This document shows, one piece after another, positions 26-35,025 of a stretch of 64,000 nucleotides of DNA. The position numbers and the translations under genes are program-made. Location of the stretch: positions 186,001 through 250,000 of IMG/VR virus record IMGVR_UViG_3300027985_000918. One strand, written 5' to 3'. The notes under the pieces are model-generated. The model saw nothing but the letters and a program-made list of their open reading frames with translations. It searched no databases and was not told where the DNA came from. Every line of letters starts with the position of its first letter. Position 1 is the first letter of the stretch.

Positions 26-53
26 GGTAATCCCAACGCATATGTAAGTAGTG
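26..53 (+). promoter_or_regulatory. Candidate bipartite promoter GGTAAT-N16-GTAGTG
   Basis: GGTAAT at 26-31 and GTAG at 48-51, 24 nt upstream of the ATG at 76. The same motif and spacing occur at 13835, 34882-34910 and 34998. Confidence 0.55.
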
Positions 54-75
54 CTGGGATGGTAAGGAGAACGCC

Positions 76-330
76 ATGAGAGAGAAAACGCAGTTAGTCG
101 CCACCATCCTGATTTTTTTGGCTCTATGTGTGGCTTGGTTCTTCTTCTACGTGAAGCCGGCTGAGGATCATCGCAATAAGGTGTGGAGCTGCATGGCCGA
201 ATTGCCGAACATGCCTCGTTTCGAGGCATACAAGGCCTGCCACAATGACAATATCGGTCAGGCCGGTCTCCTCATTGGTTTTTTCGACCCACCCATCCCC
301 GTCGGCTACCACCCGCCCCGTCGTCGTTAG
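76..330 (+). CDS. Small membrane-anchored hypothetical protein
   Basis: AAGGAG RBS before the ATG and an N-terminal hydrophobic helix (LVATILIFLALCVAWFFFYV). Its stop overlaps the stop of the convergent gene. Confidence 0.6.
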   Translation: MREKTQLVATILIFLALCVAWFFFYVKPAEDHRNKVWSCMAELPNMPRFEAYKACHNDNIGQAGLLIGFFDPPIPVGYHPPRRR

Positions 331-2597
331 ACCCCGTCGATGTACGCCAGGTAGATGGCGGAGATATCCACCACCACGGCATCCCCACCATATGTGTCCG
401 CCCCCGCCCCCGCCGCCCTTTTGACCGTGATATAGAGAATGTCCCCATGCCCACCGGCTCGGCGAGCCCTCGCCTGAGAGATCTTCAGGACGAACTCACT
501 ATCCACCTCTTGCCGGGCAACCCCCGGGGTTGCGGTCACCACGGGAAGACTCTGCTCATTCGGATGGGGGATTCCTGGGTTAGCGAAACCCAGTACCTCT
601 CCGCTTGCCACGAAAGTCCAGTATACGGTCCACTCAACGTTGCCTACAGTGGCGTCGGAAGGACACCATTTCCACGAAATTCTGATAGGGGTGGAAGTGT
701 CCGTATTCTCGGGAAGAGTGCCTGACCGAGTCACCCGGGAGTCGAACCCTGCTCGGAAGTTGTTCTCAACCGTAGGTGCGGCGATATTCATAGAGACCCA
801 GATGTTCTGGTCAGTCGGAGCGGTGCCGAACCCTACCACCTTCCCGAACTCCCCCAGTGCCCAAGGCAGCGATTCCTCCACCCGAGCCAGCCCATCCATC
901 TCTCGAAGGCCGTTCTCGTCAAACCGAGTCCTGGTGGGGACCATCTTGATGAGGTCTACGATGGGAGATGTGGCGATGGGAGCAGTGATGCGGAACCGCA
1001 CCCAGTACAGGTCTACCCCCAGAGCCATCGGGTCATTAGCCACCCAGAGAGGTGGCATGTTTCTGTCGAACCTCAGGTGTTCCCCTCCGTTGAGGTTCTG
1101 CCACAGATCCATCGCCTGGGGGATAAACGGTGACTCTTCCTCGGTCACCATGAACGTAAAGGCCGTCCAGGCTCCGCCGTCCCAATATTCTGCCTCCACC
1201 GTCCCGCCCCCCAGGGCCATCACCTGAGAGATAGGGGAGAATTCCAGGCCGTAGAAAGGAAACCCACCGTCAAGCTGCCATCCCACGTAGAGGGACGTGT
1301 CGACATTCGTGTTGGGAAACACGGTGACTGGGGAACCCTCAGTTACCGCAGCCACCGACACGTCTGCGAATGCCGTCCCATCCCAGGTGAATGCTCGAAC
1401 TCCAAGGGTTGTCACGTCCCCTTGGCCCGTGACCAGCTCTCGGCCGATGCCAGGGGTACCAACATGTAGGGCCGACCAGACGGTGAGGGACGGGTCGATT
1501 CCCGCTCCGGAGCGGTCGCCATATCCCGTAATCTTGGAGTAATCCTCGGCCCTTACCCTCTCGGCATCCAAGGTAACCCCGTGCAGAACAATATATCCGT
1601 TGATGTCCTCCTGCAGTACATCGAGGGCTGCTGAAACGGTATGTATCCGACTTACACCATTAGCTACGATAACCCCTCCTCCAACCCCCGTGTGCATCAC
1701 TGCCGTCGTTGCCCCCAACACAAATGCACCTTCCCCCCTAATCTCACCCCCGTTTTCGACATACAACGCCGAAGCACACCCTTCCATAGAAGTAGACGAA
1801 AATGCAGAGAAAGCTCCCGCCCCAATAGACTCAAGAGGGTGAATCACCGCACGGTTTACCAGGCCGTGGTTTATGACGGTAGACGCTGGTTGTGCCCGTA
1901 GGCCGTAGGAAATGCCGTCGTTAATCAACCCGTGGCGGACGTACAAGATCGAGCCGTCTTTCGCCGTAGCAGCACCAAACCCCCCCAAAAACACCACACT
2001 TTCGAGCAGCCCTGAGAGGGCTCCTTCTACAACCACCCCCCAGGCGTTGGTTGGTGAGACGATGTTGACTTTTCGGATAGACGCCCGATCCCCAAGAGTG
2101 ATGAGATCAGTGTTCGGAAAGGCCGCCTTCGCCTGAATAGTCACTACGTCGACACCCCAGCAATCCAGATGCACCTGTGCGGCGACGCTAAAAGGATCTT
2201 CCTCGTAAACCCCCGGAAGGAGGAGGATGAGTGTCCCAGCCGTTGTCTCCGCATCGCAGGCGGCCTTGATTGTGGTGTAGTCACCTTGGATGGGGTCCGG
2301 GGAGACACGAACGACCTTGTCGATCTTCGTACCCATCGCCACCTGAATGTCGTCCTCAGCCATGAGCTGAGCGGTGACGTGTCCCCTGTTGATATATCCT
2401 CGAATGACGCCGGAGGTGTAGGAAAGGGAGACCTTCGTGTCGTACACGAGGTCCACGTGCCCACGGGCTGGGACGTAAGGAGGTCCGGCGGCTCTGAACT
2501 TCCCCTCTCCGTCGTCCGTAGTGGTAATGTCGGAGAGGATCAGGCTGTCGCCGGCCAATCCGGTATGGGTCACTCGCAAAAGGATGCCGCCAGCCAT
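327..2597 (-). CDS. Virion fibre/spike-like protein with parallel beta-helix (pectin-lyase-like) domain
   Basis: 756 aa with a GGAGG RBS. GDYTTIKAACDA..LILLLPGVYEE is a typical beta-helix cap motif, followed by V/G/A-rich coils and a beta-rich C-terminal domain ending ..DTYGGDAVVVDISAIY. Confidence 0.65.
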   Translation of the reverse strand: MAGGILLRVTHTGLAGDSLILSDITTTDDGEGKFRAAGPPYVPARGHVDLVYDTKVSLSYTSGVIRGYINRGHVTAQLMAEDDIQVAMGTKIDKVVRVSPDPIQGDYTTIKAACDAETTAGTLILLLPGVYEEDPFSVAAQVHLDCWGVDVVTIQAKAAFPNTDLITLGDRASIRKVNIVSPTNAWGVVVEGALSGLLESVVFLGGFGAATAKDGSILYVRHGLINDGISYGLRAQPASTVINHGLVNRAVIHPLESIGAGAFSAFSSTSMEGCASALYVENGGEIRGEGAFVLGATTAVMHTGVGGGVIVANGVSRIHTVSAALDVLQEDINGYIVLHGVTLDAERVRAEDYSKITGYGDRSGAGIDPSLTVWSALHVGTPGIGRELVTGQGDVTTLGVRAFTWDGTAFADVSVAAVTEGSPVTVFPNTNVDTSLYVGWQLDGGFPFYGLEFSPISQVMALGGGTVEAEYWDGGAWTAFTFMVTEEESPFIPQAMDLWQNLNGGEHLRFDRNMPPLWVANDPMALGVDLYWVRFRITAPIATSPIVDLIKMVPTRTRFDENGLREMDGLARVEESLPWALGEFGKVVGFGTAPTDQNIWVSMNIAAPTVENNFRAGFDSRVTRSGTLPENTDTSTPIRISWKWCPSDATVGNVEWTVYWTFVASGEVLGFANPGIPHPNEQSLPVVTATPGVARQEVDSEFVLKISQARARRAGGHGDILYITVKRAAGAGADTYGGDAVVVDISAIYLAYIDGV

Positions 2598-2660
2598 GAG
2601 TCCTCCGTGGGAGGTCCTAGACCCCCTAACGGTTCCGTCTCATAGGGCAACTATCACCTC

Positions 2661-3089
2661 TCAGGAGTAGCCATCCTTATACCAGCCCCCGCCCTTCAAC
2701 TGGAAGCTCCCCCGGGACATGAGCTTGAAGGTAGGACTCCCACATCTCCGCTCTACGTACCCCACCAGAGAGGTCAGCGCTTCCCCTGTCTCGGTATCAG
2801 AAAACCCCTGGCTCTCGTGGAAACCCCCCGCACTCAAAGGCTCCCCAGCATCGTTGAAAAAGTGGCTCACGTCATAGAGGGGCACGGTACAGCAGCCAGC
2901 AGGAACATGGGTCGGAAGCACCCGGGATGCTCCGGCAGAGAACCCGGGCTTGAGTTGAAAACCGTCGTACTGGAACGGCCGAAGCACTCGGATTCCCACT
3001 GCGGGGCACGACGGGTTGGGATCTGACATCTTCTGGAGGATGTCGAACTTGTGACCGCACTCTTCACACTGGAACTCGTAGATGGGCAT
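2661..3089 (-). CDS. FmdB-family zinc-ribbon protein with a large insertion
   Basis: MPIYEFQCEECGHKFDILQKMSD..CP..CG..SFQLKGGGWYKDGY matches the FmdB (CxxC_CxxC_SSSS) pattern. There are 86 residues between CP and CG. Confidence 0.8.
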   Translation of the reverse strand: MPIYEFQCEECGHKFDILQKMSDPNPSCPAVGIRVLRPFQYDGFQLKPGFSAGASRVLPTHVPAGCCTVPLYDVSHFFNDAGEPLSAGGFHESQGFSDTETGEALTSLVGYVERRCGSPTFKLMSRGSFQLKGGGWYKDGYS

Positions 3090-3091
3090 CT

Positions 3092-3637
3092 CTACTCCGG
3101 GATGGTGACGTCGTATAGGCTAATGAGGGCCAGGCCGTCACAAGGGTCATAGGTGGCCTGAATAGCGCCATGCGGAACTTCGGCCCCCTCTTCCTCCAAA
3201 ACCTCCCTCAGCCGTAGGGCCTCCGGGATGATGTCGCCAGGTGGGGACACCATCATGTGGACGTTGGGGATGTCCAGAGCACACCCCAACGTGTTCGCCT
3301 TGGTCCCGTCCCCGCTATCGCATGTGTCAAAACCGTTTCGGCGAAGCACCCGGACCGTGTGGCGGATGCCGTCATCGAGCTGGTCGTAGTCGAGGTCATC
3401 CACAAGGAGACCGACCCGGGCCGCCCGGAGGGCCTTCTGCTCGGGAGTTTCTTCCTCCGTGTACACCTCGACCGTACAGCCCTGCTGGGCGATCAGGTTC
3501 TCTGCGGCTTCCCGGAGGTTCCTGGTGCCACAGAGCTTCCAGACCGTCATCTCGCCATTATGCTCCAGCTTGGGGTTCCCCGGGAGAGACATCTCCAGGG
3601 GACTTCCGCCCCGAAGGATAAACGTCCAGACCTTCAC
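3092..3637 (-). CDS. Hypothetical protein with a D.GI..V..L...GF.T.DSG.G motif
   Basis: GTG start overlaps the upstream TGA (GTGA) with a GAGGT RBS, so the start is revised from the track value 3694. LDDGIRHTVRVLRRNGFDTCDSGDG resembles a TYW3-like N-terminal motif. Confidence 0.65.
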   Translation of the reverse strand: MKVWTFILRGGSPLEMSLPGNPKLEHNGEMTVWKLCGTRNLREAAENLIAQQGCTVEVYTEEETPEQKALRAARVGLLVDDLDYDQLDDGIRHTVRVLRRNGFDTCDSGDGTKANTLGCALDIPNVHMMVSPPGDIIPEALRLREVLEEEGAEVPHGAIQATYDPCDGLALISLYDVTIPE

Positions 3638-3933
3638 AGCACCACCTCTTGATGACTTCCCCGCCACAAGGTTGCTCGGGGATCTTTGGAGCACCCCAAG
3701 AAAACGACCTGGTAGGGTTTCTCCGTGTTGAATGTCTCGTCATCTAGGCTGACGACAGAGACATGGCCGCCATCTGGAAGGACCGCAGTTCTTCCCGAAA
3801 ACGTGGCCTGGTAGGGGATTGCTGACGCCATAACTTTCCTCAACAACTGGGCCGAAGCGTCATCCCGACAAACTGCCACCAGCCAGGACCTTCTTGATGC
3901 CGCCTGGCCTAGCAACTCCAACACCTGGTTCAT
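3634..3933 (-). CDS. Hypothetical protein (99 aa)
   Basis: ATG at 3933 with a GGAG RBS just after the upstream stop at 3948. The track ORF extends upstream into the neighbouring gene. Confidence 0.65.
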   Translation of the reverse strand: MNQVLELLGQAASRRSWLVAVCRDDASAQLLRKVMASAIPYQATFSGRTAVLPDGGHVSVVSLDDETFNTEKPYQVVFLGCSKDPRATLWRGSHQEVVL

Positions 3934-6676: not shown

Positions 6677-9600
6677 TCAGCAGAGCCGGCGGGCTCGGGC
6701 TGTCCAGAAGAATTCGCTCTCATTGACGAGGACCGCCTCATCCCCGAACAGCTCCTTCCAGGGTTCGAGTTCCTCCAGCATCGTACCGTCAGGCAGCTTG
6801 ATGCGGAGCAGACGGGTGCCCTTCCCTCGACACTGGATGATGACCCGAGCCAGCTCATCCACGGTCTCGTACCGTAGAGGTCCCCTCAGCTCGAAGATGT
6901 ATTCGTCCCCCTTCTTGAGACCCATAGGAGGGCCGGCAGGCTCCTGGGATTCGACGGCGGCGACCGCCAGGGCAGCCACAGCCTCATCCTGGACAGCATG
7001 CAACGCCGACTGGCCATCGGGGTCCCCATCGGCTCCCGTGTAGGCCAGCGGGACATCCTCAGGGGGACTTAGCTCGGGGTCTTCACGAGGGTCTACCACT
7101 GGGGCAGACAGCGGAGCACTGGGCACAGGCTTGGCGGGCACCAGCGGCTTGGCCTCGGGCCTCTGGCTCGGGTCCTTGGACCAGGCAACCACCTCATCGA
7201 AGTTGTGCATCCTGAAGTACGGGGCCAGCTCAGCCGGGAACTTGGACATCTCGCCCCAGACCAGCCCGTCGGCCACTGCCTTGTCCGGCTTTTTGTACTT
7301 CTTGTTGCCGTTGAACCGTACCTCCCCCGCCCGCATGGCATTCAGGTCCCACTCCACGTCCCAGGCGTGACCGATCTCCACGTCCGATGTTAGAGGGATC
7401 GGCCACTTCTTAGCCAGGATGAAGGCGTTTCGACTCATGAGCGGCTTGATGATCTCAATGGCCTCTTCCAGCACGTCCCCGCTAATGTCAAACACCAGCT
7501 CGTCGTGCATGGTGATAATCATGAGGACCTTGTCCTTGTCCCATCCCCGCTGCTTCATCTCCTTGTACACGAGGGCCATTGCGATCTTCGTGATGTCGGC
7601 GCTGGAGTTATGGACGACCACACCGTCGCAGACGAAGGCGTGTACGCAATCCTTCACCTCCACATCGAACATTTCTACCGGCTCACCCGTGTCCTCTACC
7701 TCTACTACCTGCTCGTAGTTATACTCCAGAAGGGCCGTGATGGTTGAAGGTACCTCTTTCGGAGGGAGCTTTGCCAGATACCGCTGGCACTGTGACTTGC
7801 TACCCGATCCCGCTCTGAGACGAAGCACAGCGGATTTCTCACTACGCTGCAAATCAGCATAGATGCTACTGCCATACACCGTCTCCCCAATGCGCCGGAT
7901 CAAATCCTGTGGAAGTGTGTGCCACTGCCCCGTCCGGGGATTCGACTCGATGGCCCACAATCGGGCGGATTCCTCTGGGATCAAGAATCCTACCTGATTC
8001 CGAAACGCCACCCGGTCCTTGACGAATACACGTTTGCTGTCCAACCGGACAGTAGACCGGATGCCCAGGGTGCGCAGGAGTTTATGGGTGTCCATCAACA
8101 GGTCGGGATTCGTACTACGCACGTCTACTGCCTGTGCCACGTTCACGCAGCCCTCGGCACTGAAATAGCCTCGAAGGAAAGCTGCCCGGTGTCTTGCTGA
8201 CTGGGCCCACACGGCTTCCGGCACCCGCTTGGTCCAGGTATTCCAATCACCCAAACCCAACATACGGCAGAACTCCCGGAAAGCTGTGTTCCAGAAACAC
8301 ACCTGCCACGTCGGGAGGCGGCCATCCCCGTCCACACGGGGCTTCTCCTTCACCGTGGCGGCCAACCCCAGAGGGGGCGCCAGACGGTCAGCATAGTAGC
8401 GGGCCTGCTGTGCCGCATCCGGGCCTCCAACGTGGATGATGAGGCCATCTTCCTGAATAGACCCATCTCCGATGACGAGCCCCAGCAGTTCCCACAGTGC
8501 ATCGTGGTTGCCCTCGAACCTGTAACCTTTCTTGTCCTCGAAGGACAGAACTTGATCTGGCAGTTCCACTCCCACGGCATCTGTGACAACCCACATATCC
8601 GGGGTCAAGTCCTCCTGTCGCACCCAGGTGAGAAGCCCTTCCTCATACACACGGAATCTATGGTCGGGACTGGTTCGCATCACCAACCCCGACATGAGGG
8701 TGGTGTGCATCAACTTCTTGAGCCCCGATGGGAAGGCCCTGCCTTTCGCCCAACAAGTGCCAGTCCACACGTCGAATGTTTTTCCCGACAGATCTTCGAT
8801 CCGTCGGATACCCAAGCTGGTGGGCACTCGACTACCACCGTGCAGACAGCCCTGGATGGGCCCATTCACACTGTTTCGCTCCGCCTTGGAGCGAAACCCG
8901 CCGTCCTCGCTGTTGATGTCGGGCACAGGGTACTTGCGGCCGAAGGCCGTAAGCACATACTCGTGCTTGCGAGCGAAATCCCACTGAGCACGCCACCAGG
9001 AAGCCAGCGTCTTGTACGTCTCGTCGAACTGCCTCTTGACCCTCCAGCCTTCGTTCTTCGAGCATCCCGTGGCTCGGATGACAGCGTTGCCGCCGCCGCC
9101 GTAGCACAGGGCGAAGTTGGTGGCCTTGGCATCCTGACGGAGCTGCTTCCAGTTGGGGCGATCGAGGGCGTCCTCCCCAAAGATGTTCAGGGCGGTCAGC
9201 GTGTGCAGGTCCCCGATCTTGTCGGACCCGCAGTTGGGGCACCGGGGAGGCGGAGCCTCGGGTGTGCAGGTACCATCCCCCTTGTCGAAGGTTCGAGAGC
9301 ATGAGCTACACCGGAAGAACTCGGCCATCCATTTCGGCTCTCGGCTGAGGTTCGTGACCAGCCGCAGCTCCACGCCGCTGAAGTCGATGGCGACGATGTA
9401 CCGCCGGGGGGCTTCCGGGGACTTGGGGGGTCGGGCGGCGATGCACTCTCGTAGCCGCCTCATGCACTCAGGTCTCTCGGGATCGTAGGTTGCCGGAACC
9501 GACTGCAGGTTCATCTGGGGCCAGCCAACAAGCTGGACCTTCGCCTTAGCAGGAGTAGCAAAACGCCCCGTGTCCACCTTGTGGGCACGGAAGTTGATTC

Positions 9601-11098
9601 GCATCGTCCCATCGGTAGGATCAGCCCACTCCAACATTGGGAACAGGTAGTTCGTCAGCGCCTTGTGGACCTCTCGGAACCTCTTGATCTTCCCCATGTA
9701 GGGATACTTGTCCTTGGCGCTCTCGATGACGGCATCCAGGATATCCCTGGATGTCTTGACTTGCCCGGATTTCTCGGTGAACACCAGCCCCGGGACCCCC
9801 AGCTCCCAAAACATCTCCCCGAGCTGCTTGGGGGAAGCCACATCGTAGATGGCGGGCCAGGGTTTCCCCGCCCGAACCACCGGCTCCTTCGGGTCCGTGA
9901 ACCCTAGGGCCTGGTACTGATTTTTGGCCCGCTGGATCTGGTCGTTCAGGAGGTTATTGGGGTTATGGGACTCAAACGTCCGCCGGATAGCCTTGTAGTA
10001 GCCCGGCATCACATCCCTGCCCAGGACCTCGGAGACCGCCTCATACAAATCGAAGATGGACTCGAACCACTCCTGTTGGCCAAGCTGAAGCAGCTCCAAC
10101 ACCTTGGACTTGTCCCGGTAGATGCGGTTACGGTGCATCCACCGGACAGCTCCCACACAACTCTTCTCGATGCCGTAGATAGACTTCTGGGACCGCCCAT
10201 CCTCAGGGTTGACAACCTGGTCGTACACGTTGTCGAAGTGGCGGTAGGTCATAATGCCATCGCCACCGCCATACCACAGGACTTCCTGTCTTCCCGGATC
10301 GAGGGTGGCGAAGTCCATCTCCCCAGTGTGCCCTTCGGGGAACAGCTCGTGCAGCTCGATTTGGTCACAGTGCAGCTCCTGCTCCGACAGGTACTTGAGC
10401 TGCTTGTTCTTGCGCCGAGAGTCCTGAAGGTAGTACAGGATTTCGGTGTCCTCCCAGACACTGGGCTTGTCCCAGTCCCCGAAAGGCTCACCACCCCAAT
10501 ACGTCAGGAACTCTTGATCGAAGATCCCGCCATGAAAGACGGCCCGGACCCTCTTGCCCATCGTGGCTTCAATGAGGCGACGGAACTCCTCCTCGAACAA
10601 GTCCCATGGGATGTTGTGCTCAGCTCCAGCGGTATGCCGGAGGGGGATGTAGTAGCCAGTGACACCGTCAGGGCTCATGCAAACCCCAACGATCTTGTCC
10701 ACCGTCTCTCCCACACCCTGAGCGTTGTAGAACACCCGATTGTCCAGGCCGGTAGTCTCCAGGTCGAGAGCGTAGTACCCGTGTGGAGCGTTGATGCAGT
10801 GATCGATGCAAGCCGCAAGGTTGTCCTGATTCACCAGGACAAACTTACAGTCCGTCATCCAGTCCCGCACCGCTACCTGGGGGTACTGCTGATCGATCAG
10901 GAAGTCGGCACCCGAGAGGGCGTCCTCACCATCACATACGGGAGGGGTGCTCTGGGGGGTCAAGGGGAATCCCCCCTCGTCCTCATCTTCATCATCGTAA
11001 ATGTCGAGAGCGCCCAGGTTGAGAATTTCGTCTTCCGGCAAGATAGGTCCTCCGATGTGTCGTCCAAGCCTCCCTACTCGGTTAGAGGCTGAACTCAT
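6677..11098 (-). CDS. polA: Family A DNA polymerase (3'-5' exonuclease + polymerase) with intein
   Basis: ExoI YALDLETTGLD; KVDTGRF; motif A AIDFSGVELR; motif B RQDAKATNFALCYGGG; ERNSVNGPIQG|SSAD; motif C TMHDELVF. The true start may be TTG at 11041 (GGAGG RBS). Confidence 0.95.
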   Translation of the reverse strand: MSSASNRVGRLGRHIGGPILPEDEILNLGALDIYDDEDEDEGGFPLTPQSTPPVCDGEDALSGADFLIDQQYPQVAVRDWMTDCKFVLVNQDNLAACIDHCINAPHGYYALDLETTGLDNRVFYNAQGVGETVDKIVGVCMSPDGVTGYYIPLRHTAGAEHNIPWDLFEEEFRRLIEATMGKRVRAVFHGGIFDQEFLTYWGGEPFGDWDKPSVWEDTEILYYLQDSRRKNKQLKYLSEQELHCDQIELHELFPEGHTGEMDFATLDPGRQEVLWYGGGDGIMTYRHFDNVYDQVVNPEDGRSQKSIYGIEKSCVGAVRWMHRNRIYRDKSKVLELLQLGQQEWFESIFDLYEAVSEVLGRDVMPGYYKAIRRTFESHNPNNLLNDQIQRAKNQYQALGFTDPKEPVVRAGKPWPAIYDVASPKQLGEMFWELGVPGLVFTEKSGQVKTSRDILDAVIESAKDKYPYMGKIKRFREVHKALTNYLFPMLEWADPTDGTMRINFRAHKVDTGRFATPAKAKVQLVGWPQMNLQSVPATYDPERPECMRRLRECIAARPPKSPEAPRRYIVAIDFSGVELRLVTNLSREPKWMAEFFRCSSCSRTFDKGDGTCTPEAPPPRCPNCGSDKIGDLHTLTALNIFGEDALDRPNWKQLRQDAKATNFALCYGGGGNAVIRATGCSKNEGWRVKRQFDETYKTLASWWRAQWDFARKHEYVLTAFGRKYPVPDINSEDGGFRSKAERNSVNGPIQGCLHGGSRVPTSLGIRRIEDLSGKTFDVWTGTCWAKGRAFPSGLKKLMHTTLMSGLVMRTSPDHRFRVYEEGLLTWVRQEDLTPDMWVVTDAVGVELPDQVLSFEDKKGYRFEGNHDALWELLGLVIGDGSIQEDGLIIHVGGPDAAQQARYYADRLAPPLGLAATVKEKPRVDGDGRLPTWQVCFWNTAFREFCRMLGLGDWNTWTKRVPEAVWAQSARHRAAFLRGYFSAEGCVNVAQAVDVRSTNPDLLMDTHKLLRTLGIRSTVRLDSKRVFVKDRVAFRNQVGFLIPEESARLWAIESNPRTGQWHTLPQDLIRRIGETVYGSSIYADLQRSEKSAVLRLRAGSGSKSQCQRYLAKLPPKEVPSTITALLEYNYEQVVEVEDTGEPVEMFDVEVKDCVHAFVCDGVVVHNSSADITKIAMALVYKEMKQRGWDKDKVLMIITMHDELVFDISGDVLEEAIEIIKPLMSRNAFILAKKWPIPLTSDVEIGHAWDVEWDLNAMRAGEVRFNGNKKYKKPDKAVADGLVWGEMSKFPAELAPYFRMHNFDEVVAWSKDPSQRPEAKPLVPAKPVPSAPLSAPVVDPREDPELSPPEDVPLAYTGADGDPDGQSALHAVQDEAVAALAVAAVESQEPAGPPMGLKKGDEYIFELRGPLRYETVDELARVIIQCRGKGTRLLRIKLPDGTMLEELEPWKELFGDEAVLVNESEFFWTARARRLC
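7607..8848 (-). mobile_element. Intein (414 aa) with LAGLIDADG homing endonuclease in PolA
   Basis: Starts CLHGGSRV and ends VVHN followed by Ser. Endonuclease blocks LLGLVIGDG and FLRGYFSAEG. Removing it restores NGPIQG-SSAD. Confidence 0.95.
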
Positions 11099-13313: not shown

Positions 13314-13787
13314 CTATAGGGAACCCTGCATCTTCGCCCGTTTCTCAAAGGTGATGCCGTCGAGGTGATCCAGCTCATGCTGGAAGCAGATCGCCAGGAG
13401 ACCGGAGACCCAGTCGGCAAACGGCTTGCCGTTTTCATCTAGGGCTCGGATGCGGATACGGAAAGCCCTCTGAACCTTGAGGGTCTCCCCGGGGAACGAA
13501 AGGCACCCCTCAGGGATGGAAGTCTCCCCCTCGAAATCCAAGATCTCCGGATTGATGAACACCATGGGGGCGCTCTTCGGGGACACGTCCATCACGAAGA
13601 GGCGGTGGGTCAAACCCACCTGGTTGGCAGCCAGGCCGATCCCGCCCTTCTGGTACATCGTGACGAACATCCGGTCGATTAGGGGACGGATGGCGGCCAC
13701 GTCCTCGACGAGAAGGCAAGGGGTTTCCAGGCGGACATCGGGAGCCTGGATCAGAGGAAGAGGTTCGGATGCCATGTCGGGGATCAC
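13314..13787 (-). CDS. def: Peptide deformylase
   Basis: All three PDF motifs are present: GIGLAANQ, EGCLSFPG, QHELDHLDG. Short C-terminus. Confidence 0.95.
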   Translation of the reverse strand: MIPDMASEPLPLIQAPDVRLETPCLLVEDVAAIRPLIDRMFVTMYQKGGIGLAANQVGLTHRLFVMDVSPKSAPMVFINPEILDFEGETSIPEGCLSFPGETLKVQRAFRIRIRALDENGKPFADWVSGLLAICFQHELDHLDGITFEKRAKMQGSL

Positions 13788-13834: not shown

Positions 13835-13863
13835 GGTAACCCCGAGTGAGGGTCTGGGTAGTT
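13835..13863 (+). promoter_or_regulatory. Candidate bipartite promoter GGTAAC-N17-GTAGTT
   Basis: Upstream of the plus-strand SF2 gene. The GGTAAC sits inside the GGGG-TAA-CCCC inverted repeat. Confidence 0.55.
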
Positions 13864-13868
13864 GGAGG

Positions 13869-15617
13869 GTGAACGACGGAGACCACTTCATGAAAATCGG
13901 ACACGAAAAAATCTTTCCTCAGCAAATTCAGATGGCCACGCTGATTTGGATGCTGCTCTTGGACCGTCTCCAGGGTAACCCCCATGCCAGAACGCCTCTA
14001 CTAATGGCCCAGCCCCAGCAGGGCAAGACAGGGGCGATCATCTGCCTCATCGACAAGTTCATCGACTACTGCGTGAAGCATTCCAAAACATTCCAGGTTA
14101 TCGTGACCTGCGGACTGGCAGAGTTGTCCCTACGGGACCAGACGCTGGCACGCCTCACGGAATCTGTAGCAGATGACGGAATGACGCTGACAGGGGCCTG
14201 CCTCGACATCAAGGCTCGGAGCACTGGGTTGGCTCGGTACAAGCCTGTTGCGGGTACGACAATGCCCGGGATCCTCGTGGTGAACCGATCCACTAAACTT
14301 CGCAGTCTCAAAAAACATCTTCTCTGTGATGTGGATCTTCGACTGGTCATCTCCGATGAGTGCCACGTCGGTAACGGGAAGGGTGGCTGTATGGATAAGT
14401 TCCTGCAGACACTGGGAGTGCGACCAAATCAACAGATCCATACCTGGCAGGACGATGCCTGTGGCGGGAAAACACTCTTCGTCCCCGTGTCTGCAACCCC
14501 GTTCGCCCATTTCGCCCTCTCTGCCAAATATAAGGGGGCTCCGGCATCCCGCACTCTCTATGACACGGTGTATGTAGCCCCAGGTGAGAACTATACAAGC
14601 CCACTGGATTTGTGGGACAACCGTCTTCTTCCTACAGGAGCCCTTTTCTGTAATGTAGGGGACGAGCTGGTCCCTTCTCCCATCCTGGGAGACATCTTCG
14701 ACCATTTCGAGCAGGAGTGCGAAAGCTACGGTCCGGGGTATTCCCTCATGAGGGCTACCGGAAAAGAACACGAAGCCCTCATGGGTTACATTGAGAACCG
14801 TAACCGCAGAGGGATCCCGACTGAAGTCATGTGCTTCGACAGCAAGCCTGGGAAGGATTCGGACTCCAGACCAATTTCAGAATTGCTGTCGCAATTGGCA
14901 ACTCGGCCACAGGTTCCCGTGGTGTTGGTAATCCGAGGTGCTTTCCGGGCGGGTATGACCCTCCCCCAAAACCACTACATCCGCCTCTGGGTAGAAACAT
15001 CTTCCGACAACGTGGATACCCAACTCCAGGCAGGAGTAGGACGGGCCTGCGGGTATGGGCGAAAAGGGGATGTTTTCCCCATCTACTGTGACATCCCCAA
15101 GATCCAAGAAGCCTTGGACTTCTACCGGAATCTGGAGTTTTTGGAGCCGGTGTCCGCAATCCCCTCTGGGGTACAGAACCACCAGGCCCTCAATACGGTC
15201 GATGTCGCTCCCGTGGGGTGGATCTCCAAGCAGGAATGGATTGATGGAAAGGGCATGCTGCATCCCGCAAGAGACCGGATGTGGTTCAAACCAAGGCATG
15301 CCCAAATTGCTACCACCAGGGGCAACATCGCCAAAGATACCGCTCTGCTGACACTACGAGGAACCCGTGAAAGTGGCAACACATGGGGGCATGAGGTCAA
15401 CGGCAAAGCCGATTCGGAGCGTTACCGGGAGTATGTGAGACTGTACCCCGACCGGCAACCCGATTCCACCCTGGAGGCGATGCACCACCACTATGACCTG
15501 TTGCTTAAAACTTTTCCGGGGTGCGAAGGCAACGTAATCGTGTTCGAGCACACTGGGGATGAATCCCCGGATGGTGACTCTATTCAGAGGCGTCGGTCTG
15601 CTCTGGCGGAATACTAA
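13869..15617 (+). CDS. SF2 (DExH) helicase/ATPase-like protein, Z1-endonuclease-like motifs
   Basis: Walker A AQPQQGKTG, Walker B ISDECH, motif III SATP, and DTQLQAGVGRACGY. The likely start is ATG 13890 (GGAG RBS). Confidence 0.75.
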   Translation: MNDGDHFMKIGHEKIFPQQIQMATLIWMLLLDRLQGNPHARTPLLMAQPQQGKTGAIICLIDKFIDYCVKHSKTFQVIVTCGLAELSLRDQTLARLTESVADDGMTLTGACLDIKARSTGLARYKPVAGTTMPGILVVNRSTKLRSLKKHLLCDVDLRLVISDECHVGNGKGGCMDKFLQTLGVRPNQQIHTWQDDACGGKTLFVPVSATPFAHFALSAKYKGAPASRTLYDTVYVAPGENYTSPLDLWDNRLLPTGALFCNVGDELVPSPILGDIFDHFEQECESYGPGYSLMRATGKEHEALMGYIENRNRRGIPTEVMCFDSKPGKDSDSRPISELLSQLATRPQVPVVLVIRGAFRAGMTLPQNHYIRLWVETSSDNVDTQLQAGVGRACGYGRKGDVFPIYCDIPKIQEALDFYRNLEFLEPVSAIPSGVQNHQALNTVDVAPVGWISKQEWIDGKGMLHPARDRMWFKPRHAQIATTRGNIAKDTALLTLRGTRESGNTWGHEVNGKADSERYREYVRLYPDRQPDSTLEAMHHHYDLLLKTFPGCEGNVIVFEHTGDESPDGDSIQRRRSALAEY

Positions 15618-15619
15618 GC

Positions 15620-16498
15620 ATGTACCGAGGTGACACCCCCGCAAAAACCCGGTGCCGGAAATTGGTATGGGGCCTGCACAAGCGGCTCTTGGGAGAGGCT
15701 TTTCTGTCCACCCCCCACGTTTTCACGGCCTCTCGCTTCGGTGGTGACATCGAGGTACTATTGAAGAAGGGGGTGCCCCCCGATAATGTGTGGGCGGTTG
15801 ATACTGACCAGGAGGCCGTAAGAGACCTTATCCCCCTAAAGAAGCAACGGGGGTTCCGGCTATTTCCCAGAAACATCACCCAAGTGGTACAGCAGAACCC
15901 CTCGGTGCAGTCGGTCTACCTTGATTTGTGCGGGCATCTGAAAGGCCGAGATACCAGGATGTCCATCACGGAGACCGTTCGGTCCTTGCCCCGAGGCAGC
16001 GTTCTAAGTGTCACGCTGCTTCGGGGGAGAGAACAAAATCTCCATATGGACAGGGAACAAGAGCTGATTGGCCTGATCCAGCAACACACAAAGCACCCCG
16101 TGACTCTTTTGCAGGCCCTTTCCTACTTGTCAAACGACCATAAATCGAAAGGGTCCCCCATGATCACTTGGACTTTTGTGCTTCGGGAGCATAAGTCCAA
16201 GGTGAGGAGAGTTGATTTGAGCAAAAACACCGAAAACAAGTCCCAGAAGCAAAGCCAGGCGGCTCGGAAGGCGTGGGAGACTCGCCGTCGCCTAGCGGCA
16301 GAGAAAGAATCCCTGTCCCAGAAACGAAGCCAGGCGGCTCACAAAGCGTGGGAGACTCGACGCCGCTCCACTGCGGAGCAAGAAACCCTCAGTTTTGTGG
16401 ATGAGGGCCTCGGGTCTCCCACTAGCACCACCGTTGAGCCCCTAACGGTGAAGTTGATTCAGTTGTGGCAGCACATGACCCAAAAGCTGAGGGGATAG
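15620..16498 (+). CDS. Putative SAM-dependent methyltransferase-fold protein with tandem basic C-terminal repeats
   Basis: TASRFGGD..VWAVDTD..VYLDLCG looks like Rossmann MTase strands. Two copies of SQAA(R/H)KAWETRRR. Confidence 0.5.
   Translation: MYRGDTPAKTRCRKLVWGLHKRLLGEAFLSTPHVFTASRFGGDIEVLLKKGVPPDNVWAVDTDQEAVRDLIPLKKQRGFRLFPRNITQVVQQNPSVQSVYLDLCGHLKGRDTRMSITETVRSLPRGSVLSVTLLRGREQNLHMDREQELIGLIQQHTKHPVTLLQALSYLSNDHKSKGSPMITWTFVLREHKSKVRRVDLSKNTENKSQKQSQAARKAWETRRRLAAEKESLSQKRSQAAHKAWETRRRSTAEQETLSFVDEGLGSPTSTTVEPLTVKLIQLWQHMTQKLRG
16241..16365 (+). repeat. Two-copy 75-bp direct repeat (SQK(Q/R)SQAA(R/H)KAWETRRR)
   Basis: tcccagaagcaaagccaggcggctc.. at 16241 and tcccagaaacgaagccaggcggctc.. 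at 16316. Confidence 0.9.
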
Positions 16499-26456: not shown

Positions 26457-26507
26457 TGTCCCTCCGAGTTCGTCCCCCTTGCTACTCGGGACGGCGGGAG
26501 GATCGGC

Positions 26508-28767: not shown

Positions 28768-28797
28768 TTGTCTACCCTACCGGAGACGGTAGAATGG
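28768..28797. promoter_or_regulatory. Divergent promoter region with palindrome CTACCG-GAGA-CGGTAG
   Basis: Plus strand TTGTCT-N16-TAGAAT; minus strand GGTAGGGT. Lies between the divergent phosphoesterase and uvrD genes. Confidence 0.5.
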
Positions 28798-32541: not shown

Positions 32542-32544
32542 CAG

Positions 32545-33582
32545 ATGGCAGGTGAGCGATTCGTCCCTATCACCCGGGAAGAGTTCGAGCAGTGGCTCAA
32601 TGGGTTTGCAAAGAAAGCCCCCTACAAAGGCTGGAAGCGGTATGGCTCCACGGCTGGCTCTTACATCGTCAAGTTCTCCGACTATGTGGGCTGCCTCATC
32701 ACCACGACATTGACCAAGGGTGATGAGGTCAAAGGTGTCGGAGAGGCCAGTACGAAGATGCGACTAGTCGCTGTGGAAGACGGACGCCTCCTGAATAAAA
32801 AGGCCTCCCCCCAGAGATACTACCGCACCAAGGGCTGGGCGAAGACCTGGAAAGAGAAGGGGGTAGACTGGTGGTACAAGGACATCTACCTCGCCTCCCA
32901 GGACTTCTACGAGGACAAGGCCAGCATCCCTGACGTGGGCGCCCACGTCGAGGAATGGACGAATAACATCAAGTCCATCCCCGAATGGGAAAAAGACCCC
33001 TTCCTCAAGAAGCAGATGGAGGCCCTGAGTAAGGGCTGGACAATCAGCAAGAAGGTTCGGGATTCCATCGAGAGGATGATGTCTCGCCCCAGTCGGTCGA
33101 GCCGCCCCGCTCCCGAGGAACTGGGGGACGGCGAAACCTCGAACCCGGGGCAGGCCGCTTTGCCCGAGTGGATGACCAAGATCGAGTCCATCGAGGGCTG
33201 GAGGGACAACAGCTTCCTCAAAACCATGCACGACAAGGCTCGACGAGGGTTCCCTCTGACTGACCGGATGCAGGAAGGCATCGAGAAATTCCTGTTGAAC
33301 GAAAAGTCTCGCACTCGCCCCCAGGCCGACCCCCCTGGCAGCAGCCTCACTACGGAACAGAGAGCGTTCGTCGAGCGGATGAGGGCTATGAAAGACCTGG
33401 CTGGGAAAGCCAAGGACGACTGGACGGTCGGATTCCTCAACACCCTCATCACAAGAGCTGAGCGGGGGCAGTCCTTCTCCGACCGTCAGAAAGAGATCCT
33501 ACGGGATAAGATGAGGGTCTACAACACAGGCAGGCGGGCCGCCCTTCGTGTGGCTCGGGCATTCCTAAGGCAGTACCGCTAA
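32545..33582 (+). CDS. Hypothetical protein with three W..(F)L......G..(L/I/F)(S/T) helical repeats
   Basis: WEKDPFLKKQMEALSKGWTISKK, WRDNSFLKTMHDKARRGFPLTDR, WTVGFLNTLITRAERGQSFSDR. Confidence 0.8.
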   Translation: MAGERFVPITREEFEQWLNGFAKKAPYKGWKRYGSTAGSYIVKFSDYVGCLITTTLTKGDEVKGVGEASTKMRLVAVEDGRLLNKKASPQRYYRTKGWAKTWKEKGVDWWYKDIYLASQDFYEDKASIPDVGAHVEEWTNNIKSIPEWEKDPFLKKQMEALSKGWTISKKVRDSIERMMSRPSRSSRPAPEELGDGETSNPGQAALPEWMTKIESIEGWRDNSFLKTMHDKARRGFPLTDRMQEGIEKFLLNEKSRTRPQADPPGSSLTTEQRAFVERMRAMKDLAGKAKDDWTVGFLNTLITRAERGQSFSDRQKEILRDKMRVYNTGRRAALRVARAFLRQYR

Positions 33583-34490
33583 GATCTCGGCTTCCCATCT
33601 CCAGGGGCCGAGATGATATCCATGATGTTGAAGGCGGGTTCAGCCCCCTTCCTTCTCCGGCCCTTTCGAGTCTTCTTCTCCTCTACAGGTTCCGGCTCGA
33701 TCACCTCGGGCTCGATCACCTCGGGCTCGATCACCTCTTTGGGCTTAGCAGCCTTCGTGGGGGGAGTGATTACCCGAGCGCCGGAATGCTGCCTCACCCA
33801 ATCCCCCACCTCTGGTCTCATCTGGTGCAGCCCCTTGCGGGTCCCGTCAGGGTTCCTACGGCACTCCACCGGCAACAGGATGTCTCTCATCAAAAGGAAT
33901 TCCTCCTCAGAGACTTCCTCTTCGCCGATGTACCGGATCACCTCATACACATCCTCAAAAGGAACTAAAGGTGGTTTGTCGGAATCCTTGTTGGATTTTT
34001 CTAGCTCCAGATATCCCTGGGCAAGCCGAGCAACGATACCCAAATCATACCATAGCTCGTCAACAAAGAAGGCGCAGCTATCTCCGGGGTGAATGTCCGT
34101 AATCTTCCCCAGGTTAGGGAAAAGTTGGGAGGGATGCCCAGAGGAACGGTAAACCTCCTGGGTTACAGGAATGACCCGCATACCAGGACTCCCGAAAGCT
34201 AGCCCCTCGCCCGACTGAAATTCCTCGGGTTCCTCGGGCTGAGGCTCCTCGGGCTGAGGCTCCTCAACGACTTCGGCCACCCCGCCGTCTAGGGTCCGCT
34301 CGAACAGCCGAGACCTTTTTCCAATCTCCAAAATCTCTACCCACTTCTTCTCCCCAATCCTCTGCCAGCCCAGGTGGGACTTTGCCACACATTTGGCCCA
34401 AGAAAGGGGGCGAGATTTCCGGATGCCCTCTTGGGAGTCTCCGAGGGCCAGACTAATCGCCAGGGCAGCTCCTTGCAGATCATCACTCAT
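33579..34490 (-). CDS. Hypothetical protein with Glu/Pro tandem repeats
   Basis: 303 aa ORF with EPQPE and EVIEP repeats. Confidence 0.75.
   Translation of the reverse strand: MSDDLQGAALAISLALGDSQEGIRKSRPLSWAKCVAKSHLGWQRIGEKKWVEILEIGKRSRLFERTLDGGVAEVVEEPQPEEPQPEEPEEFQSGEGLAFGSPGMRVIPVTQEVYRSSGHPSQLFPNLGKITDIHPGDSCAFFVDELWYDLGIVARLAQGYLELEKSNKDSDKPPLVPFEDVYEVIRYIGEEEVSEEEFLLMRDILLPVECRRNPDGTRKGLHQMRPEVGDWVRQHSGARVITPPTKAAKPKEVIEPEVIEPEVIEPEPVEEKKTRKGRRRKGAEPAFNIMDIISAPGDGKPRS
33694..33737. repeat. 15-bp tandem repeat x3 (encodes EVIEP)
   Basis: ggctcgatcacctcg repeated three times. Confidence 0.9.
34222..34265. repeat. 15-bp tandem repeat x2-3 (encodes EPQPE)
   Basis: tcctcgggctgaggc repeats. 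Confidence 0.85.
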
Positions 34491-34858
34491 CCTGCCGTCA
34501 CCTGCTGTTCCCGCTTTTTCATGTGTGCAGCTACAACTTGGGCCGCCTCGCCTGGAGTATCCCAGAAGCCCACCCAGTTGTCATCCCGGACAGCGATCCG
34601 ACCCATTACCCCGAATCCGGGAAGTTCGATGTGGTCCGCCCGCCAGCGGCGCTCCCCCTGGTCCATCATGATCTGGTAGTTGTGCCGAACCTTGACCGGA
34701 AGTCCGGTCAGGCGGCAGGGCCGCACGACCTCGGATGTGTGGACGAAGATCACCTTCTCCACGCCACGGTACCCCTCGGGTGGGTTGGGCGGCGTCACCA
34801 TCTTGAAGAGGTGGTCCGTGCCGAGGGTATGCTGGGTCATGGTGACGTTGATCTTCAT
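34487..34858 (-). CDS. Hypothetical protein (123 aa)
   Basis: ATG 34858 with a GGAGG RBS. The track ORF's upstream extension is antisense to real plus-strand genes. Confidence 0.75.
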   Translation of the reverse strand: MKINVTMTQHTLGTDHLFKMVTPPNPPEGYRGVEKVIFVHTSEVVRPCRLTGLPVKVRHNYQIMMDQGERRWRADHIELPGFGVMGRIAVRDDNWVGFWDTPGEAAQVVAAHMKKREQQVTAG

Positions 34859-34881
34859 GGTGTCCTCCGTCGTTCTAGTTC

Positions 34882-34910
34882 CCCTACTCGGAGGAGCAAA
34901 GGAAGTTACC
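34882..34910 (-). promoter_or_regulatory. Candidate bipartite promoter GGTAAC-N17-GTAGGG
   Basis: 25 nt from the GTAG to the ATG at 34858. Confidence 0.55.
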
Positions 34911-34987
34911 GGGAAAGCGGTGGAATTCCTAGGGGGCGGGAACTCGGACGAGGAGTCCGCTGACCTGGCCGCTTGACAGAAAAGAGT

Positions 34988-35015
34988 GGGGGCTCCTGGT
35001 AACCCGGGAGCCCCC
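34988..35015. other. GC-rich inverted repeat/hairpin with GGTAAC at its apex
   Basis: gggggctcctgg-taac-ccgggagccccc forms a 12-bp stem with one T-G pair. Confidence 0.6.
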
Positions 35016-35025
35016 CCAAGTAGTT
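34998..35025 (+). promoter_or_regulatory. Candidate bipartite promoter GGTAAC-N16-GTAGTT
   Basis: 27 nt from the GTAG to the ATG at 35051; divergent from the copy at 34882-34910. Confidence 0.55.

What the first reader, a model, noticed from the sequence alone, without database searches (positions are those of the whole stretch)
26..35025. Recurring bipartite promoter-like motif GGTAAY-N16/17-GTAG at the head of four transcription units
Seen: GGTAAT-16-GTAGTG (26-53, +), GGTAAC-17-GTAGTT (13835-13863, +), GGTAAC-17-GTAGGG (34910-34882, -) and GGTAAC-16-GTAGTT (34998-35025, +). All four are intergenic, 24-28 nt upstream of an RBS-supported start, and placed where a new strand orientation begins. 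In two cases the GGTAAC sits at the apex of an inverted repeat. A related half-site CCGAGTAG precedes polA (11074-11081) and the SNF2 gene (26482-26489). Established: two boxes 16-17 nt apart is sigma-factor geometry, and these boxes are not TTGACA/TATAAT. Inference: the motif is read by an ECF-type host sigma or a phage-encoded sigma, probably for early or accessory genes.
Basis: partly seen in the sequence, partly recalled or inferred. Interest (0 to 1): 0.6.

Follow-up and report, generated by a model that had tools for sequence, protein, structure and literature searches.

The report
Phage-specific promoter class, ECF-sigma type
The four sites belong to a family of about 100 two-box promoters (GGTAAC, 16 or 17 bases, GTAG) in an uncultured 402-kb hydrothermal-vent phage, most likely read by the host RNA polymerase carrying a sigma factor the phage encodes; this is a known strategy with a new motif and an uncharacterised sigma family.

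Summary
The pattern occurs 4 times in the window (0.14 expected) and 84 times in the 402,383-bp phage genome, or about 100 by weight matrix. Spacing is 16 nt (52 sites) or 17 nt (31 sites). 80 of 84 sites lie in the 9% of the genome that is intergenic. They share the strand of the local genes, with a median of 28 nt from GTAG to the start codon.

The extended consensus is R-GGTAAC-C ... C-R-R-GTAG. It has the 'AAC' -35 box, a 'GTA' -10 box and the spacing typical of ECF (group 4) sigma promoters.

The phage shows no RNA polymerase gene. It encodes a divergent sigma ("sigmaA", 373 aa, sigma2 + sigma4 plus an N-terminal domain). It also encodes a weaker sigma-like protein ("sigmaC") and a protein with two sigma4 domains.

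Four related phage contigs (sigmaA 60-71% identical) keep the motif. All five carry one copy antisense inside the sigma gene. A distant relative has about 32 copies of GGTTCC-N16-CGTA.

The 'half-sites' before polA and SNF2, and the 'apex of an inverted repeat', are not general features. No RNA data exist, so start sites and the reading sigma remain inferred.

Verdict: a real promoter class, and a new member of a known kind.

The parts
26..51 (+). Promoter P1, GGTAAT-N16-GTAG. It is the only GGTAAT variant in the genome and the weakest of the four sites. It overlaps the end of the upstream (+) gene.
   Evidence: Weight-matrix score 16.4, rank 90 of 101.
76..330 (+). 84-aa ORF served by P1. The RBS AAGGAG lies 7 nt before the ATG. 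No Pfam family matched.
13835..13861 (+). Promoter P2, GGTAAC-N17-GTAG, in the divergent gap between the (-) gene ending at 13787 and the (+) gene at 13890.
   Evidence: Score 24.0.
13890..16498 (+). Two-gene unit behind P2: 575 aa (13890-15617) and 292 aa (15620-16498). Function unknown.
34884..34910 (-). Promoter P3, GGTAAC-N17-GTAG, followed by the common leader GAACGACGGAGGACACC and then ATG.
   Evidence: Score 25.1.
33579..34858 (-). Two-gene unit behind P3: 123 aa (34487-34858) and 303 aa (33579-34490). No Pfam family matched.
34998..35023 (+). Promoter P4, GGTAAC-N16-GTAG, back to back with P3 (87 nt apart).
   Evidence: Score 24.8.
34988..35015 (.). 9-bp inverted repeat (arms 34988-34996 and 35007-35015) with the -35 box of P4 in its loop. 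It is a local feature, not part of the class consensus.
35051..35619 (+). Two-gene unit behind P4: 110 aa (weak YuA gp49-like match) and 76 aa.
11074..11081 (-). CCGAGTAG before polA. It is a -10-like box only, with no -35 box. Not supported as a member of the class.
26482..26489 (-). CCGAGTAG before the SNF2 helicase gene. It is a -10-like box only. Not supported as a member of the class.

Best explanation
The four sites are members of a class of about 100 promoters in a 402-kb phage (IMG/VR UViG 3300028422_000919, direct terminal repeats, hydrothermal-vent metagenome). The consensus is R-GGTAAC-C, then 16 or 17 nt, then GTAG, with the -10 box extended to C-R-R-GTAG.

I propose the following. 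The host core RNA polymerase reads these promoters after binding a phage-encoded, ECF-like sigma factor. The best candidate is 'sigmaA' at genome 85015-86136 (-), 373 aa. Its sigma4 domain would bind the GGTAAC box and its sigma2 domain would melt DNA at the GTAG box. Transcription would start about 7-9 nt after GTAG, giving short leaders, often of the form GAAC-R-ACGGAGGAC.

SigmaA itself sits behind a sigma70-like promoter (TTGnnn-N17-TA(A/G)AA(G/C)). The proposed cascade is therefore host sigma, then sigmaA, then the GGTAAC regulon of accessory and host-takeover genes and tRNAs. The replication core and the giant late genes use other signals.

Shown here: the motif statistics, its placement, its conservation in relatives, the sigma-like genes, and the lack of any detectable phage polymerase. 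Inferred: the start sites, the timing, and which sigma reads the motif.
For: - Counts: 84 exact sites against about 1 expected, spacer 16 or 17 only, 80 of 84 intergenic. A weight matrix finds 101 sites at score 14 or more, 94 of them intergenic.
- Orientation and distance: in every 20-kb bin the site strand follows the local gene strand. The median distance from GTAG to the start codon is 28 nt. G[AG]AC lies 5-14 nt after GTAG in 37% of sites against 10% of all GTAG. Purines peak at +7 and +9.
- Both boxes are needed: -10 boxes without a -35 box are mostly in coding DNA.
- ECF resemblance: ECF promoters share 'AAC' at -35 and 'CGT(A/C)' at -10, for example sigmaW TGAAAC...CGTA (PMC5758882).
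- No phage polymerase detected: no match to T7-type, beta or beta' RNA polymerase families, and the beta and beta' searches rang in all 14 control genomes.
- SigmaA is sigma-like by sequence: TIGR02937 E 1.4e-10 over profile positions 19-163 of 165; Pfam Sigma70_ECF 21.0 bits against a cut-off of 21.1. Its family profile hits PDB 3mzy, a sigma-H, at E 3e-6.
- SigmaA is sigma-like by fold: every listed Foldseek match to the AlphaFold model (ranks 1-50) is a sigma factor. VIA-align matches sigma2 and sigma4 separately, for example SigR region 4 (Z 7.7, rmsd 2.0 over 62 residues) and SigC region 2 (Z 6.2, rmsd 2.1 over 67).
- Conservation: contigs with sigmaA 60-71% identical keep the motif. L067 has 13 sites in 20.6 kb, L068 has 3, L082 has 4 in 4.3 kb, L083 has 4 in 1.9 kb.
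- Link to the sigma gene: in all five phages one copy lies antisense in the linker-coding part of the sigmaA gene, at the same alignment position. The genome bin 80-100 kb around sigmaA holds 21 sites, including an 11-promoter array.
- Distant relative: G001, with sigmaA 35% identical, has about 32 copies of GGTTCC-N16-CGTA, the same architecture.
- Upstream of sigmaA: sigma70-like boxes are conserved in three phages and there is no sense-strand GGTAAC site.
Against: - No transcript data: only DNA runs hold this sequence. Promoter activity, start sites and timing are therefore untested.
- SigmaA scores just under the curated cut-offs (41.0 against 42.9 bits; 21.0 against 21.1).
- A second sigma-like family, sigmaC (genome 394592-396115), is also conserved in this phage group.
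- The co-occurrence evidence comes from close relatives that probably share both sigma genes.
- The -10 box has A or G where ECF promoters have the C of 'CGT'.
- There is no sense-strand copy upstream of the sigma gene, so the usual ECF positive autoregulation is absent.
- More distant sigmaA-family phages (G002-G005) show no enrichment of a GGTWMC...GTA pattern.
- The host is unknown, so a host sigma could not be tested.
Confidence: 0.6

Rival explanations
1. The motif is a real promoter class, but it is read by the other phage sigma-like protein, sigmaC (507 aa, genome 394592-396115, coiled-coil N-terminus plus a sigma2/sigma4-like C-terminal part). SigmaA would then read something else. The antisense copy inside the sigmaA gene would be a class-switch device that shuts sigmaA off.
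For: SigmaC spans TIGR02937 positions 25-162 (E 1.3e-3). Six of 11 family members hit that model, the best at 8.9e-6. SigmaC has homologues in G001, G002, G003 and G005. It has its own sigma70-like promoter, TTGACT-N16-TATGGT, at genome 394465. An antisense promoter inside sigmaA fits a shut-off by a later factor just as well.
Against: The sigma signal is much weaker than for sigmaA, and the profile search of solved structures gives only HTH-level matches. The gene lies in the late, motif-free part of the genome next to a gCCTATAg site. This suits a late sigma reading that second motif. The motif density peaks around sigmaA, not around sigmaC.
Confidence: 0.15
2. A host alternative sigma factor (ECF type) reads the motif. 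The phage borrows a host stress regulon signal, and the phage sigma-like proteins do other jobs.
For: The boxes and spacing are ECF-like (PMC5758882). No sense-strand copy precedes any phage sigma gene. Genes that look early carry the motif.
Against: The phage carries two or three sigma-like genes and no detectable polymerase. About 100 promoters depending on a conditional host factor would be risky for a lytic programme. Related phages from five different samples keep the motif together with sigmaA and place a copy inside that gene. A distant relative with a diverged sigmaA has a diverged motif of the same architecture.
Confidence: 0.12
3. The motif is not a sigma-type promoter. It is either the binding site of a phage transcription factor, or the promoter of an unrecognised phage-encoded RNA polymerase.
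For: No transcript data exist. Several giant ORFs (1,000-3,900 aa) have no Pfam match and could hide a very divergent polymerase. The T7-type polymerase search rang in no control genome, so it is a weak negative.
Against: Two short asymmetric boxes with a strict 16 or 17 nt spacer, both required, pointing at the gene and 22-40 nt from the start codon, are the signature of sigma70-family promoters. They are not typical of dimeric regulators, which bind palindromes, nor of single-subunit or phiKZ-type polymerases, which use one contiguous element. The beta and beta' searches found nothing while ringing in all controls.
Confidence: 0.06

Closest known systems
ECF (group 4) sigma promoters, e.g. 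Bacillus subtilis sigmaW (TGAAAC-N16-CGTA) and sigmaX (-10 CGAC) (PMC5758882; PMC1540707)
   Same: Two short boxes, both needed. 'AAC' ends the -35 box and 'GTA' lies in the -10 box. Spacing is rigid at 16 or 17 nt. The candidate reader has only sigma2 and sigma4 folds.
   Different: The -35 box is GGTAAC, not GGAAC or TGAAAC. The -10 box has A or G instead of the C of CGT, plus a conserved G after GTA. There is no positive autoregulatory copy before the sigma gene. The sigma has a conserved 70-aa N-terminal domain and a long variable linker. No anti-sigma partner was looked for.
Coliphage phiEco32 gp36, a distant sigma homologue that reads the middle and late promoters (AATGTA centred at -11.5) with host core polymerase (PMC12276001)
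   Same: A phage without its own polymerase uses host sigma70 early and then its own divergent sigma for a phage-specific promoter class. 'GTA' lies in the -10 element. The gp36 complex (9m7y_F) appears among the structural matches of sigmaA (Z 6.0).
   Different: phiEco32 promoters are defined mainly by the -10 element, whereas here a strong -35 box is obligatory. No gp79-like cofactor was identified. The genome is five times larger, with about 100 promoters.
Bacillus phage SPO1 gp28 and gp33/34, and T4 gp55/gp33, sigma cascades (PMC13401047; PMC7824862)
   Same: A temporal cascade in which host sigma transcribes phage sigma genes. More than one phage promoter class is present: here GGTAAC...GTAG, and a single-box gCCTATAg before late genes.
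   Different: There is no sequence relationship beyond the sigma70 superfamily. The timing here is inferred from gene content only. This phage has a family A polymerase and is not a T4-like 'group 2' jumbo phage.

Membership tests
ECF-type (group 4 sigma) promoter | Two boxes with a fixed spacer of about 16-17 nt, both required | tested here: met
   Spacer 16 (52 sites) or 17 (31 sites), and 0-4 at other spacers. Orphan -10 boxes are not enriched the way full sites are.
ECF-type (group 4 sigma) promoter | 'AAC' motif in the -35 box (PMC5758882) | tested here: met
   GGTAAC in 83 of 84 sites and GGTAAT in one.
ECF-type (group 4 sigma) promoter | 'CGT' core in the -10 box (the sigmaX/W/M consensus; -10 boxes are group-specific in ECFs generally; PMC5758882) | tested here: not met
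   The position before GTA is A (57 sites) or G (27), never C. The core is RGTAG. The distant relative G001 does have CGTA.
ECF-type (group 4 sigma) promoter | A copy upstream of its own sigma gene (positive autoregulation, usual but not universal) | tested here: not met
   The sense-strand region upstream of sigmaA has sigma70-like boxes only. The motif copies are antisense inside the gene.
ECF-type (group 4 sigma) promoter | Transcription starts a few nt after the -10 box and depends on the sigma | not testable with these tools
   No RNA run holds the sequence.
Sigma70-family protein, group 4 architecture (candidate reader sigmaA) | Sigma2 and sigma4 domains in that order, without sigma3 | tested here: met
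   TIGR02937 covers residues 203-368 (E 1.4e-10). PDB 3mzy matches at E 3e-6. The sigma2 and sigma4 folds match separately, with only a 35-40-aa connector between them.
Sigma70-family protein, group 4 architecture (candidate reader sigmaA) | Score above the curated family cut-offs | tested here: inconclusive
   41.0 against 42.9 bits for TIGR02937, and 21.0 against 21.1 bits for PF07638. JGI names several family members 'sigma24 family protein'.
Sigma70-family protein, group 4 architecture (candidate reader sigmaA) | Binds core RNA polymerase and confers promoter specificity | not testable with these tools
   The host is unknown and no complex job was run.
Housekeeping sigma70 promoter (TTGACA-N17-TATAAT) | -35 TTGACA-like and -10 TAnnnT boxes | tested here: not met
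   The boxes differ. A separate small class, TTGAC(A/T)-N16-18-TAnnnT, exists in the same genome.
Promoter of a phage-encoded RNA polymerase (T7/N4 type or phiKZ type) | The phage encodes such a polymerase | tested here: not met
   No match to PF00940, PF00562 or PF00623. The PF00940 control rang nowhere, so that negative result is weak.

The most novel reading that the evidence does not exclude
The sigma and its promoter class form a self-limiting circuit. A copy of the promoter is kept antisense inside the hypervariable linker-coding part of the sigma gene in all five related phages examined, so that the sigma, once made, drives transcription head-on into its own gene and its host-type promoter. 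In addition, the array of 11 such promoters in 650 bp, at the main strand switch and at a local minimum of cumulative GC skew about 2 kb from the sigma gene, would act as a transcription-primed replication origin or as a sigma sink. Across a family of at least 597 huge-phage sigma proteins, each lineage would have its own two-box promoter (GGTAAC...GTAG here, GGTTCC...CGTA in G001), which would be a natural set of orthogonal sigma-promoter pairs.
Probability: 0.3. Interest if true: 0.6.

Novelty: new member of a known kind. Interest (0 to 1): 0.45.

Why it matters
It gives a transcription map for about half of an uncultured 402-kb phage: 221 of 397 predicted genes lie in same-strand runs headed by the motif. 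It also ties a large, uncharacterised sigma family of huge phages (at least 597 members in the protein search) to a testable DNA target.

Huge phages without their own polymerase are thought to redirect host polymerase with their own sigma factors (PMC7824862; PMC7162821). Cognate promoters are rarely known for uncultured ones.

The pair can be tested in a heterologous reporter without culturing phage or host. If lineage-specific pairs hold up, they would add orthogonal sigma-promoter parts for synthetic biology.

Tried and rejected
- Half-sites: CCGAGTAG before polA and SNF2 lacks a -35 box, and such orphan -10 boxes are mostly coding. Rejected as class members.
- Inverted repeat as part of the motif: only one strong case in the window and a weak genome-wide excess. 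Rejected as a class feature.
- Avoidance of TATAAT: the hexamer is absent, but only 4-6 copies are expected under Markov models. Not meaningful.
- Exact motif in 57 viral loci carrying sigmaA-family genes at 45% identity or less: essentially absent. A degenerate GGTWMC...NGTA pattern is enriched only in G001. The motif is therefore specific to a lineage, not to the family.
- Using presence or absence of sigmaC to decide between the two sigmas: sigmaC homologues are present in most relatives too. Not discriminating.
- Counting SCCTATAS in relatives without gene maps: uninformative.
- RNA evidence: only DNA runs hold the sequence.
- Megablast of polA against the phage collection found nothing. 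A protein search with sigmaA found only one partial match, in an uncultured 485-kb phage, LR745208.1.
- Rfam on the promoter array: no hit.
- Paper search for GGTAAC together with phage and sigma: nothing relevant.
- Not attempted: host identification, the large representative protein search, and complex prediction (no host polymerase sequence).


Full report
**What the sequence is.** The window is bases 186001-250000 of a single 402,383-bp contig, 60% G+C. It is filed as an IMG/VR virus record with direct terminal repeats (IMGVR_UViG_3300028422_000919). The only public runs that hold it are DNA runs from hydrothermal-vent and related metagenomes.

I made my own codon-usage gene calls: 397 genes covering 91% of the genome. 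In the window they give a replication block on the minus strand:
- a family A polymerase with an intein;
- a Prim-Pol;
- a DnaB-like helicase;
- an SNF2 helicase.

A UvrD-like helicase lies on the plus strand. Several giant ORFs of 1,200-2,100 aa have no Pfam match.

**Checking the observation.** All four sites are at the stated coordinates. The pattern GGTAAY-N16/17-GTAG gives 4 matches in the window against 0.14 expected from dinucleotide-preserving shuffles. Because the pattern was derived from these same sites, the real test is the rest of the genome.

The genome-wide numbers are as follows:
- There are 84 matches, 83 with GGTAAC. Two hundred controls with permuted boxes averaged 1.5, with a maximum of 19.
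- The spacer is 16 nt (52 sites) or 17 nt (31 sites), with 0-4 matches at any other spacer between 10 and 23.
- 80 of 84 matches lie in intergenic DNA, which is 9% of the genome.

A weight matrix built from the sites finds 101 sites at score 14 or above, 94 of them intergenic. It tolerates AGTAAC at the -35 box and GTAT or GTAA at the -10 box. No further site turns up in the window. The GGTAAT site at 26-51 is the weakest of the four.

**Anatomy of the class.** Aligned on GTAG, the conserved positions are R-GGTAAC-C and C-R-R-GTAG, with a C-rich spacer. Purines peak 7 and 9 nt after GTAG. G[AG]AC lies 5-14 nt after GTAG in 37% of sites, against 10% of all GTAG in the genome. Many sites share the leader GAAC-R-ACGGAGGAC before the ATG. 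The median distance from GTAG to the start codon is 28 nt.

In every 20-kb bin the strand of the sites follows the strand of the genes. Sites head 58 of 122 transcription-unit heads in the first 186 kb but only 11 of 72 in the rest. 221 of 397 genes lie in same-strand runs headed by a site.

The -10 box alone is not enough.

An inverted repeat around the -35 box is strong only at 34988-35015. Across the class, stems of 5 bp or more occur in 8% of sites against 3% of flank shuffles.

**What could read it.** Two short asymmetric boxes with a rigid 16 or 17 nt spacer, both required, pointing at genes from a fixed short distance, are the signature of sigma70-family promoters.
- They are not housekeeping boxes. 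The genome has a separate small class, TTGAC(A/T)-N16-18-TAnnnT. The strict TTGACA form is intergenic in all 4 cases; the looser TTGAC form matches 13 sites, 7 of them intergenic.
- Members of that class stand before tRNA clusters, often in tandem with a GGTAAC promoter, and before one of the sigma-like genes. A TTGTCT-N16-TAGAAT site at window 28768-28795 precedes the UvrD-like gene.
- The 'AAC' at -35 and 'GTA' at -10 resemble ECF promoters such as sigmaW (TGAAAC...CGTA) (PMC5758882). The C of the ECF 'CGT' is replaced here by A or G.
- Searches of the whole phage for T7-type, beta and beta' polymerase families found nothing. The last two rang in all 14 control genomes.

**The phage's sigma-like genes.**
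- SigmaA (genome 85015-86136, minus strand, 373 aa) matches TIGR02937 over nearly the whole model (E 1.4e-10, 41.0 bits, cut-off 42.9). It matches Pfam Sigma70_ECF at 21.0 bits (cut-off 21.1).
- Its family has at least 597 members, many on contigs of 100-440 kb. Some are named 'sigma24 family protein' by JGI.
- A profile of 24 members hits the solved sigma-H 3mzy at E 3e-6.
- An AlphaFold model (mean pLDDT 73; above 85 over most of residues 181-373, dipping to about 57-74 at residues 261-300) matches only sigma factors in every listed Foldseek row (ranks 1-50). It matches sigma2 and sigma4 folds separately in VIA-align.
- SigmaA has a conserved N-terminal domain (residues 30-100), a hypervariable linker (102-178) and no sigma3.
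- SigmaC (genome 394592-396115, 507 aa) is a weaker sigma-like protein. Six of 11 family members hit TIGR02937, the best at 8.9e-6.
- A 202-aa protein at genome 364554-365162 has two sigma4 domains and no sigma2.

**Evidence from relatives.** Four contigs from other samples encode sigmaA orthologues at 60-71% identity, and all keep GGTAAC-N16-GTAG:
- L067 has 13 sites in 20.6 kb;
- L068 has 3 in 5.8 kb;
- L082 has 4 in 4.3 kb;
- L083 has 4 in 1.9 kb.

In all five phages one copy lies on the antisense strand inside the sigma gene. It sits in the DNA that codes for the hypervariable linker, at the same place in the alignment. In this genome two of the only four 'coding' sites are in that gene.

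SigmaA genes in three phages are preceded by TTGnnn-N17-TA(A/G)AA(G/C) and not by the motif.

At 45% identity or less, the exact motif is absent from 57 viral loci. One such phage (G001, sigmaA 35% identical) has about 32 copies of GGTTCC-N16-CGTA, placed before ribosome-binding sites.

SigmaC homologues are also present in most of these phages, so presence or absence cannot decide between the two sigmas.

**Most likely mechanism, and its standing.** The host holoenzyme transcribes sigmaA from a sigma70-like promoter. SigmaA then redirects core polymerase to about 100 GGTAAC...GTAG promoters.

These serve many small ORFs, tRNAs and accessory genes: three VWA-domain proteins, a PARP-like protein, an OmpA-domain protein and an NAD-dependent ligase.

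The replication core and the giant late genes lack the motif. Many late genes instead carry a single box, gCCTATAg, 37-62 nt before the start.

The assignment to sigmaA rather than sigmaC or a host ECF sigma rests on four things:
- the stronger sigma signal of sigmaA;
- the clustering of sites around its gene;
- the conserved antisense copy inside it;
- the position of sigmaC in the late region.

This is inference. No start site, timing or binding was observed.

**Comparison with known systems.** It works like ECF promoters and like the phage sigma cascades of phiEco32 (gp36, AATGTA at -11.5; PMC12276001), SPO1 and T4 (PMC13401047; PMC7824862). Tested strictly as an ECF promoter, it passes on geometry and the 'AAC' box. 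It fails on the 'CGT' core and on positive autoregulation.

SigmaA is barely related to sigma families of cultured phages (PHROG 1740, E 7e-4). Huge phages are known to carry sigma genes (PMC7162821; PMC7824862). In the searches run here I found no description of this motif or of this sigma family's target.

**Verdict.** This is a real, strongly supported phage promoter class. It is a new member of a known kind. The moderate interest rests mainly on the conserved antisense copy inside the sigma gene, the promoter array, and the size of the sigma family.

Noticed in passing
G000:C1:82195-82842 (= L080:396-1043), outside the window: About five tandem 126-bp units. Each has two back-to-back divergent GGTAAC-N17-GTAG promoters, giving 11 promoters in 650 bp with no ORF and no Rfam match. 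Convergent neighbours face a short GC hairpin. The array lies at the strand switch between the 71-83 kb (-) block and the 87-120 kb (+) block, and near a local minimum of cumulative GC skew, about 2 kb from the sigmaA gene. Possible roles: origin, sigma sink, or small convergent RNAs.
   Followed up: partly
G000:C1:85669-85694 and 85744-85769 (+); L067:9838-9862 (-); L068:2672-2697 (-); L082:725-749 (-); L083:512-536 (-): A copy of the promoter motif lies antisense inside the sigmaA gene, in the DNA coding for its hypervariable linker. It is conserved at the same alignment position in five related phages.
   Followed up: yes
whole genome G000 (window included): Extreme avoidance of short palindromes. 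CGCG is completely absent on both strands. ACCGGT, ATGCAT, CAGCTG, CGTACG, CTCGAG and TTCGAA are absent (68-439 expected under an order-3 Markov model). GAGCTC occurs 10 times against 344 expected, CATCAG/CTGATG 2 against 299, and AAGCTT 2 against 143. This suggests heavy restriction pressure.
   Followed up: partly
window 50089-50096 (-), and about 10 more sites at genome 168-395 kb: A second intergenic motif, gCCTATAg, lies 37-62 nt before the start codons of large minus-strand (probably late) genes, with no evident -35 partner. 20 of 36 CCTATA copies are intergenic. It may be a late promoter class.
   Followed up: partly
window 28768-28795 (+); genome 8797, 45494, 48554, 70615, 153855, 394465: Sigma70-like promoters, TTGAC(A/T)-N16-18-TAnnnT. 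Several stand in tandem with a GGTAAC promoter before tRNA clusters, one stands before sigmaC, and TTGTCT-N16-TAGAAT stands before the UvrD-like gene in the window.
   Followed up: partly
window 6677-11041 (-): The family A DNA polymerase gene (1,454 aa) carries an intein with a LAGLIDADG domain (Intein_splicing residues 773-1145, LAGLIDADG_3 residues 952-1001).
   Followed up: no
G000:C1:86948-96100 (L010:1-9000): A run of paralogous genes built from 69-bp (23-aa) tandem repeats. Several sit behind near-identical copies of the promoter plus a shared leader (genome 55853, 86494, 91119, 101306).
   Followed up: no
G000:C1:364554-365162 (-) and 394592-396115 (+): Two further sigma-related genes. 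One is a 202-aa protein with two sigma4 domains and no sigma2. The other is a 507-aa protein with a coiled-coil N-terminus and a weak sigma2/sigma4-like C-terminal part that is conserved in related huge phages.
   Followed up: partly
G001 (record of L015, IMGVR_UViG_3300007513_000007): A 180-kb phage fragment with a sigmaA-family gene (35% identity) has about 32 copies of GGTTCC-N16-CGTA, placed before ribosome-binding sites. This is a different two-box motif of the same architecture.
   Followed up: partly
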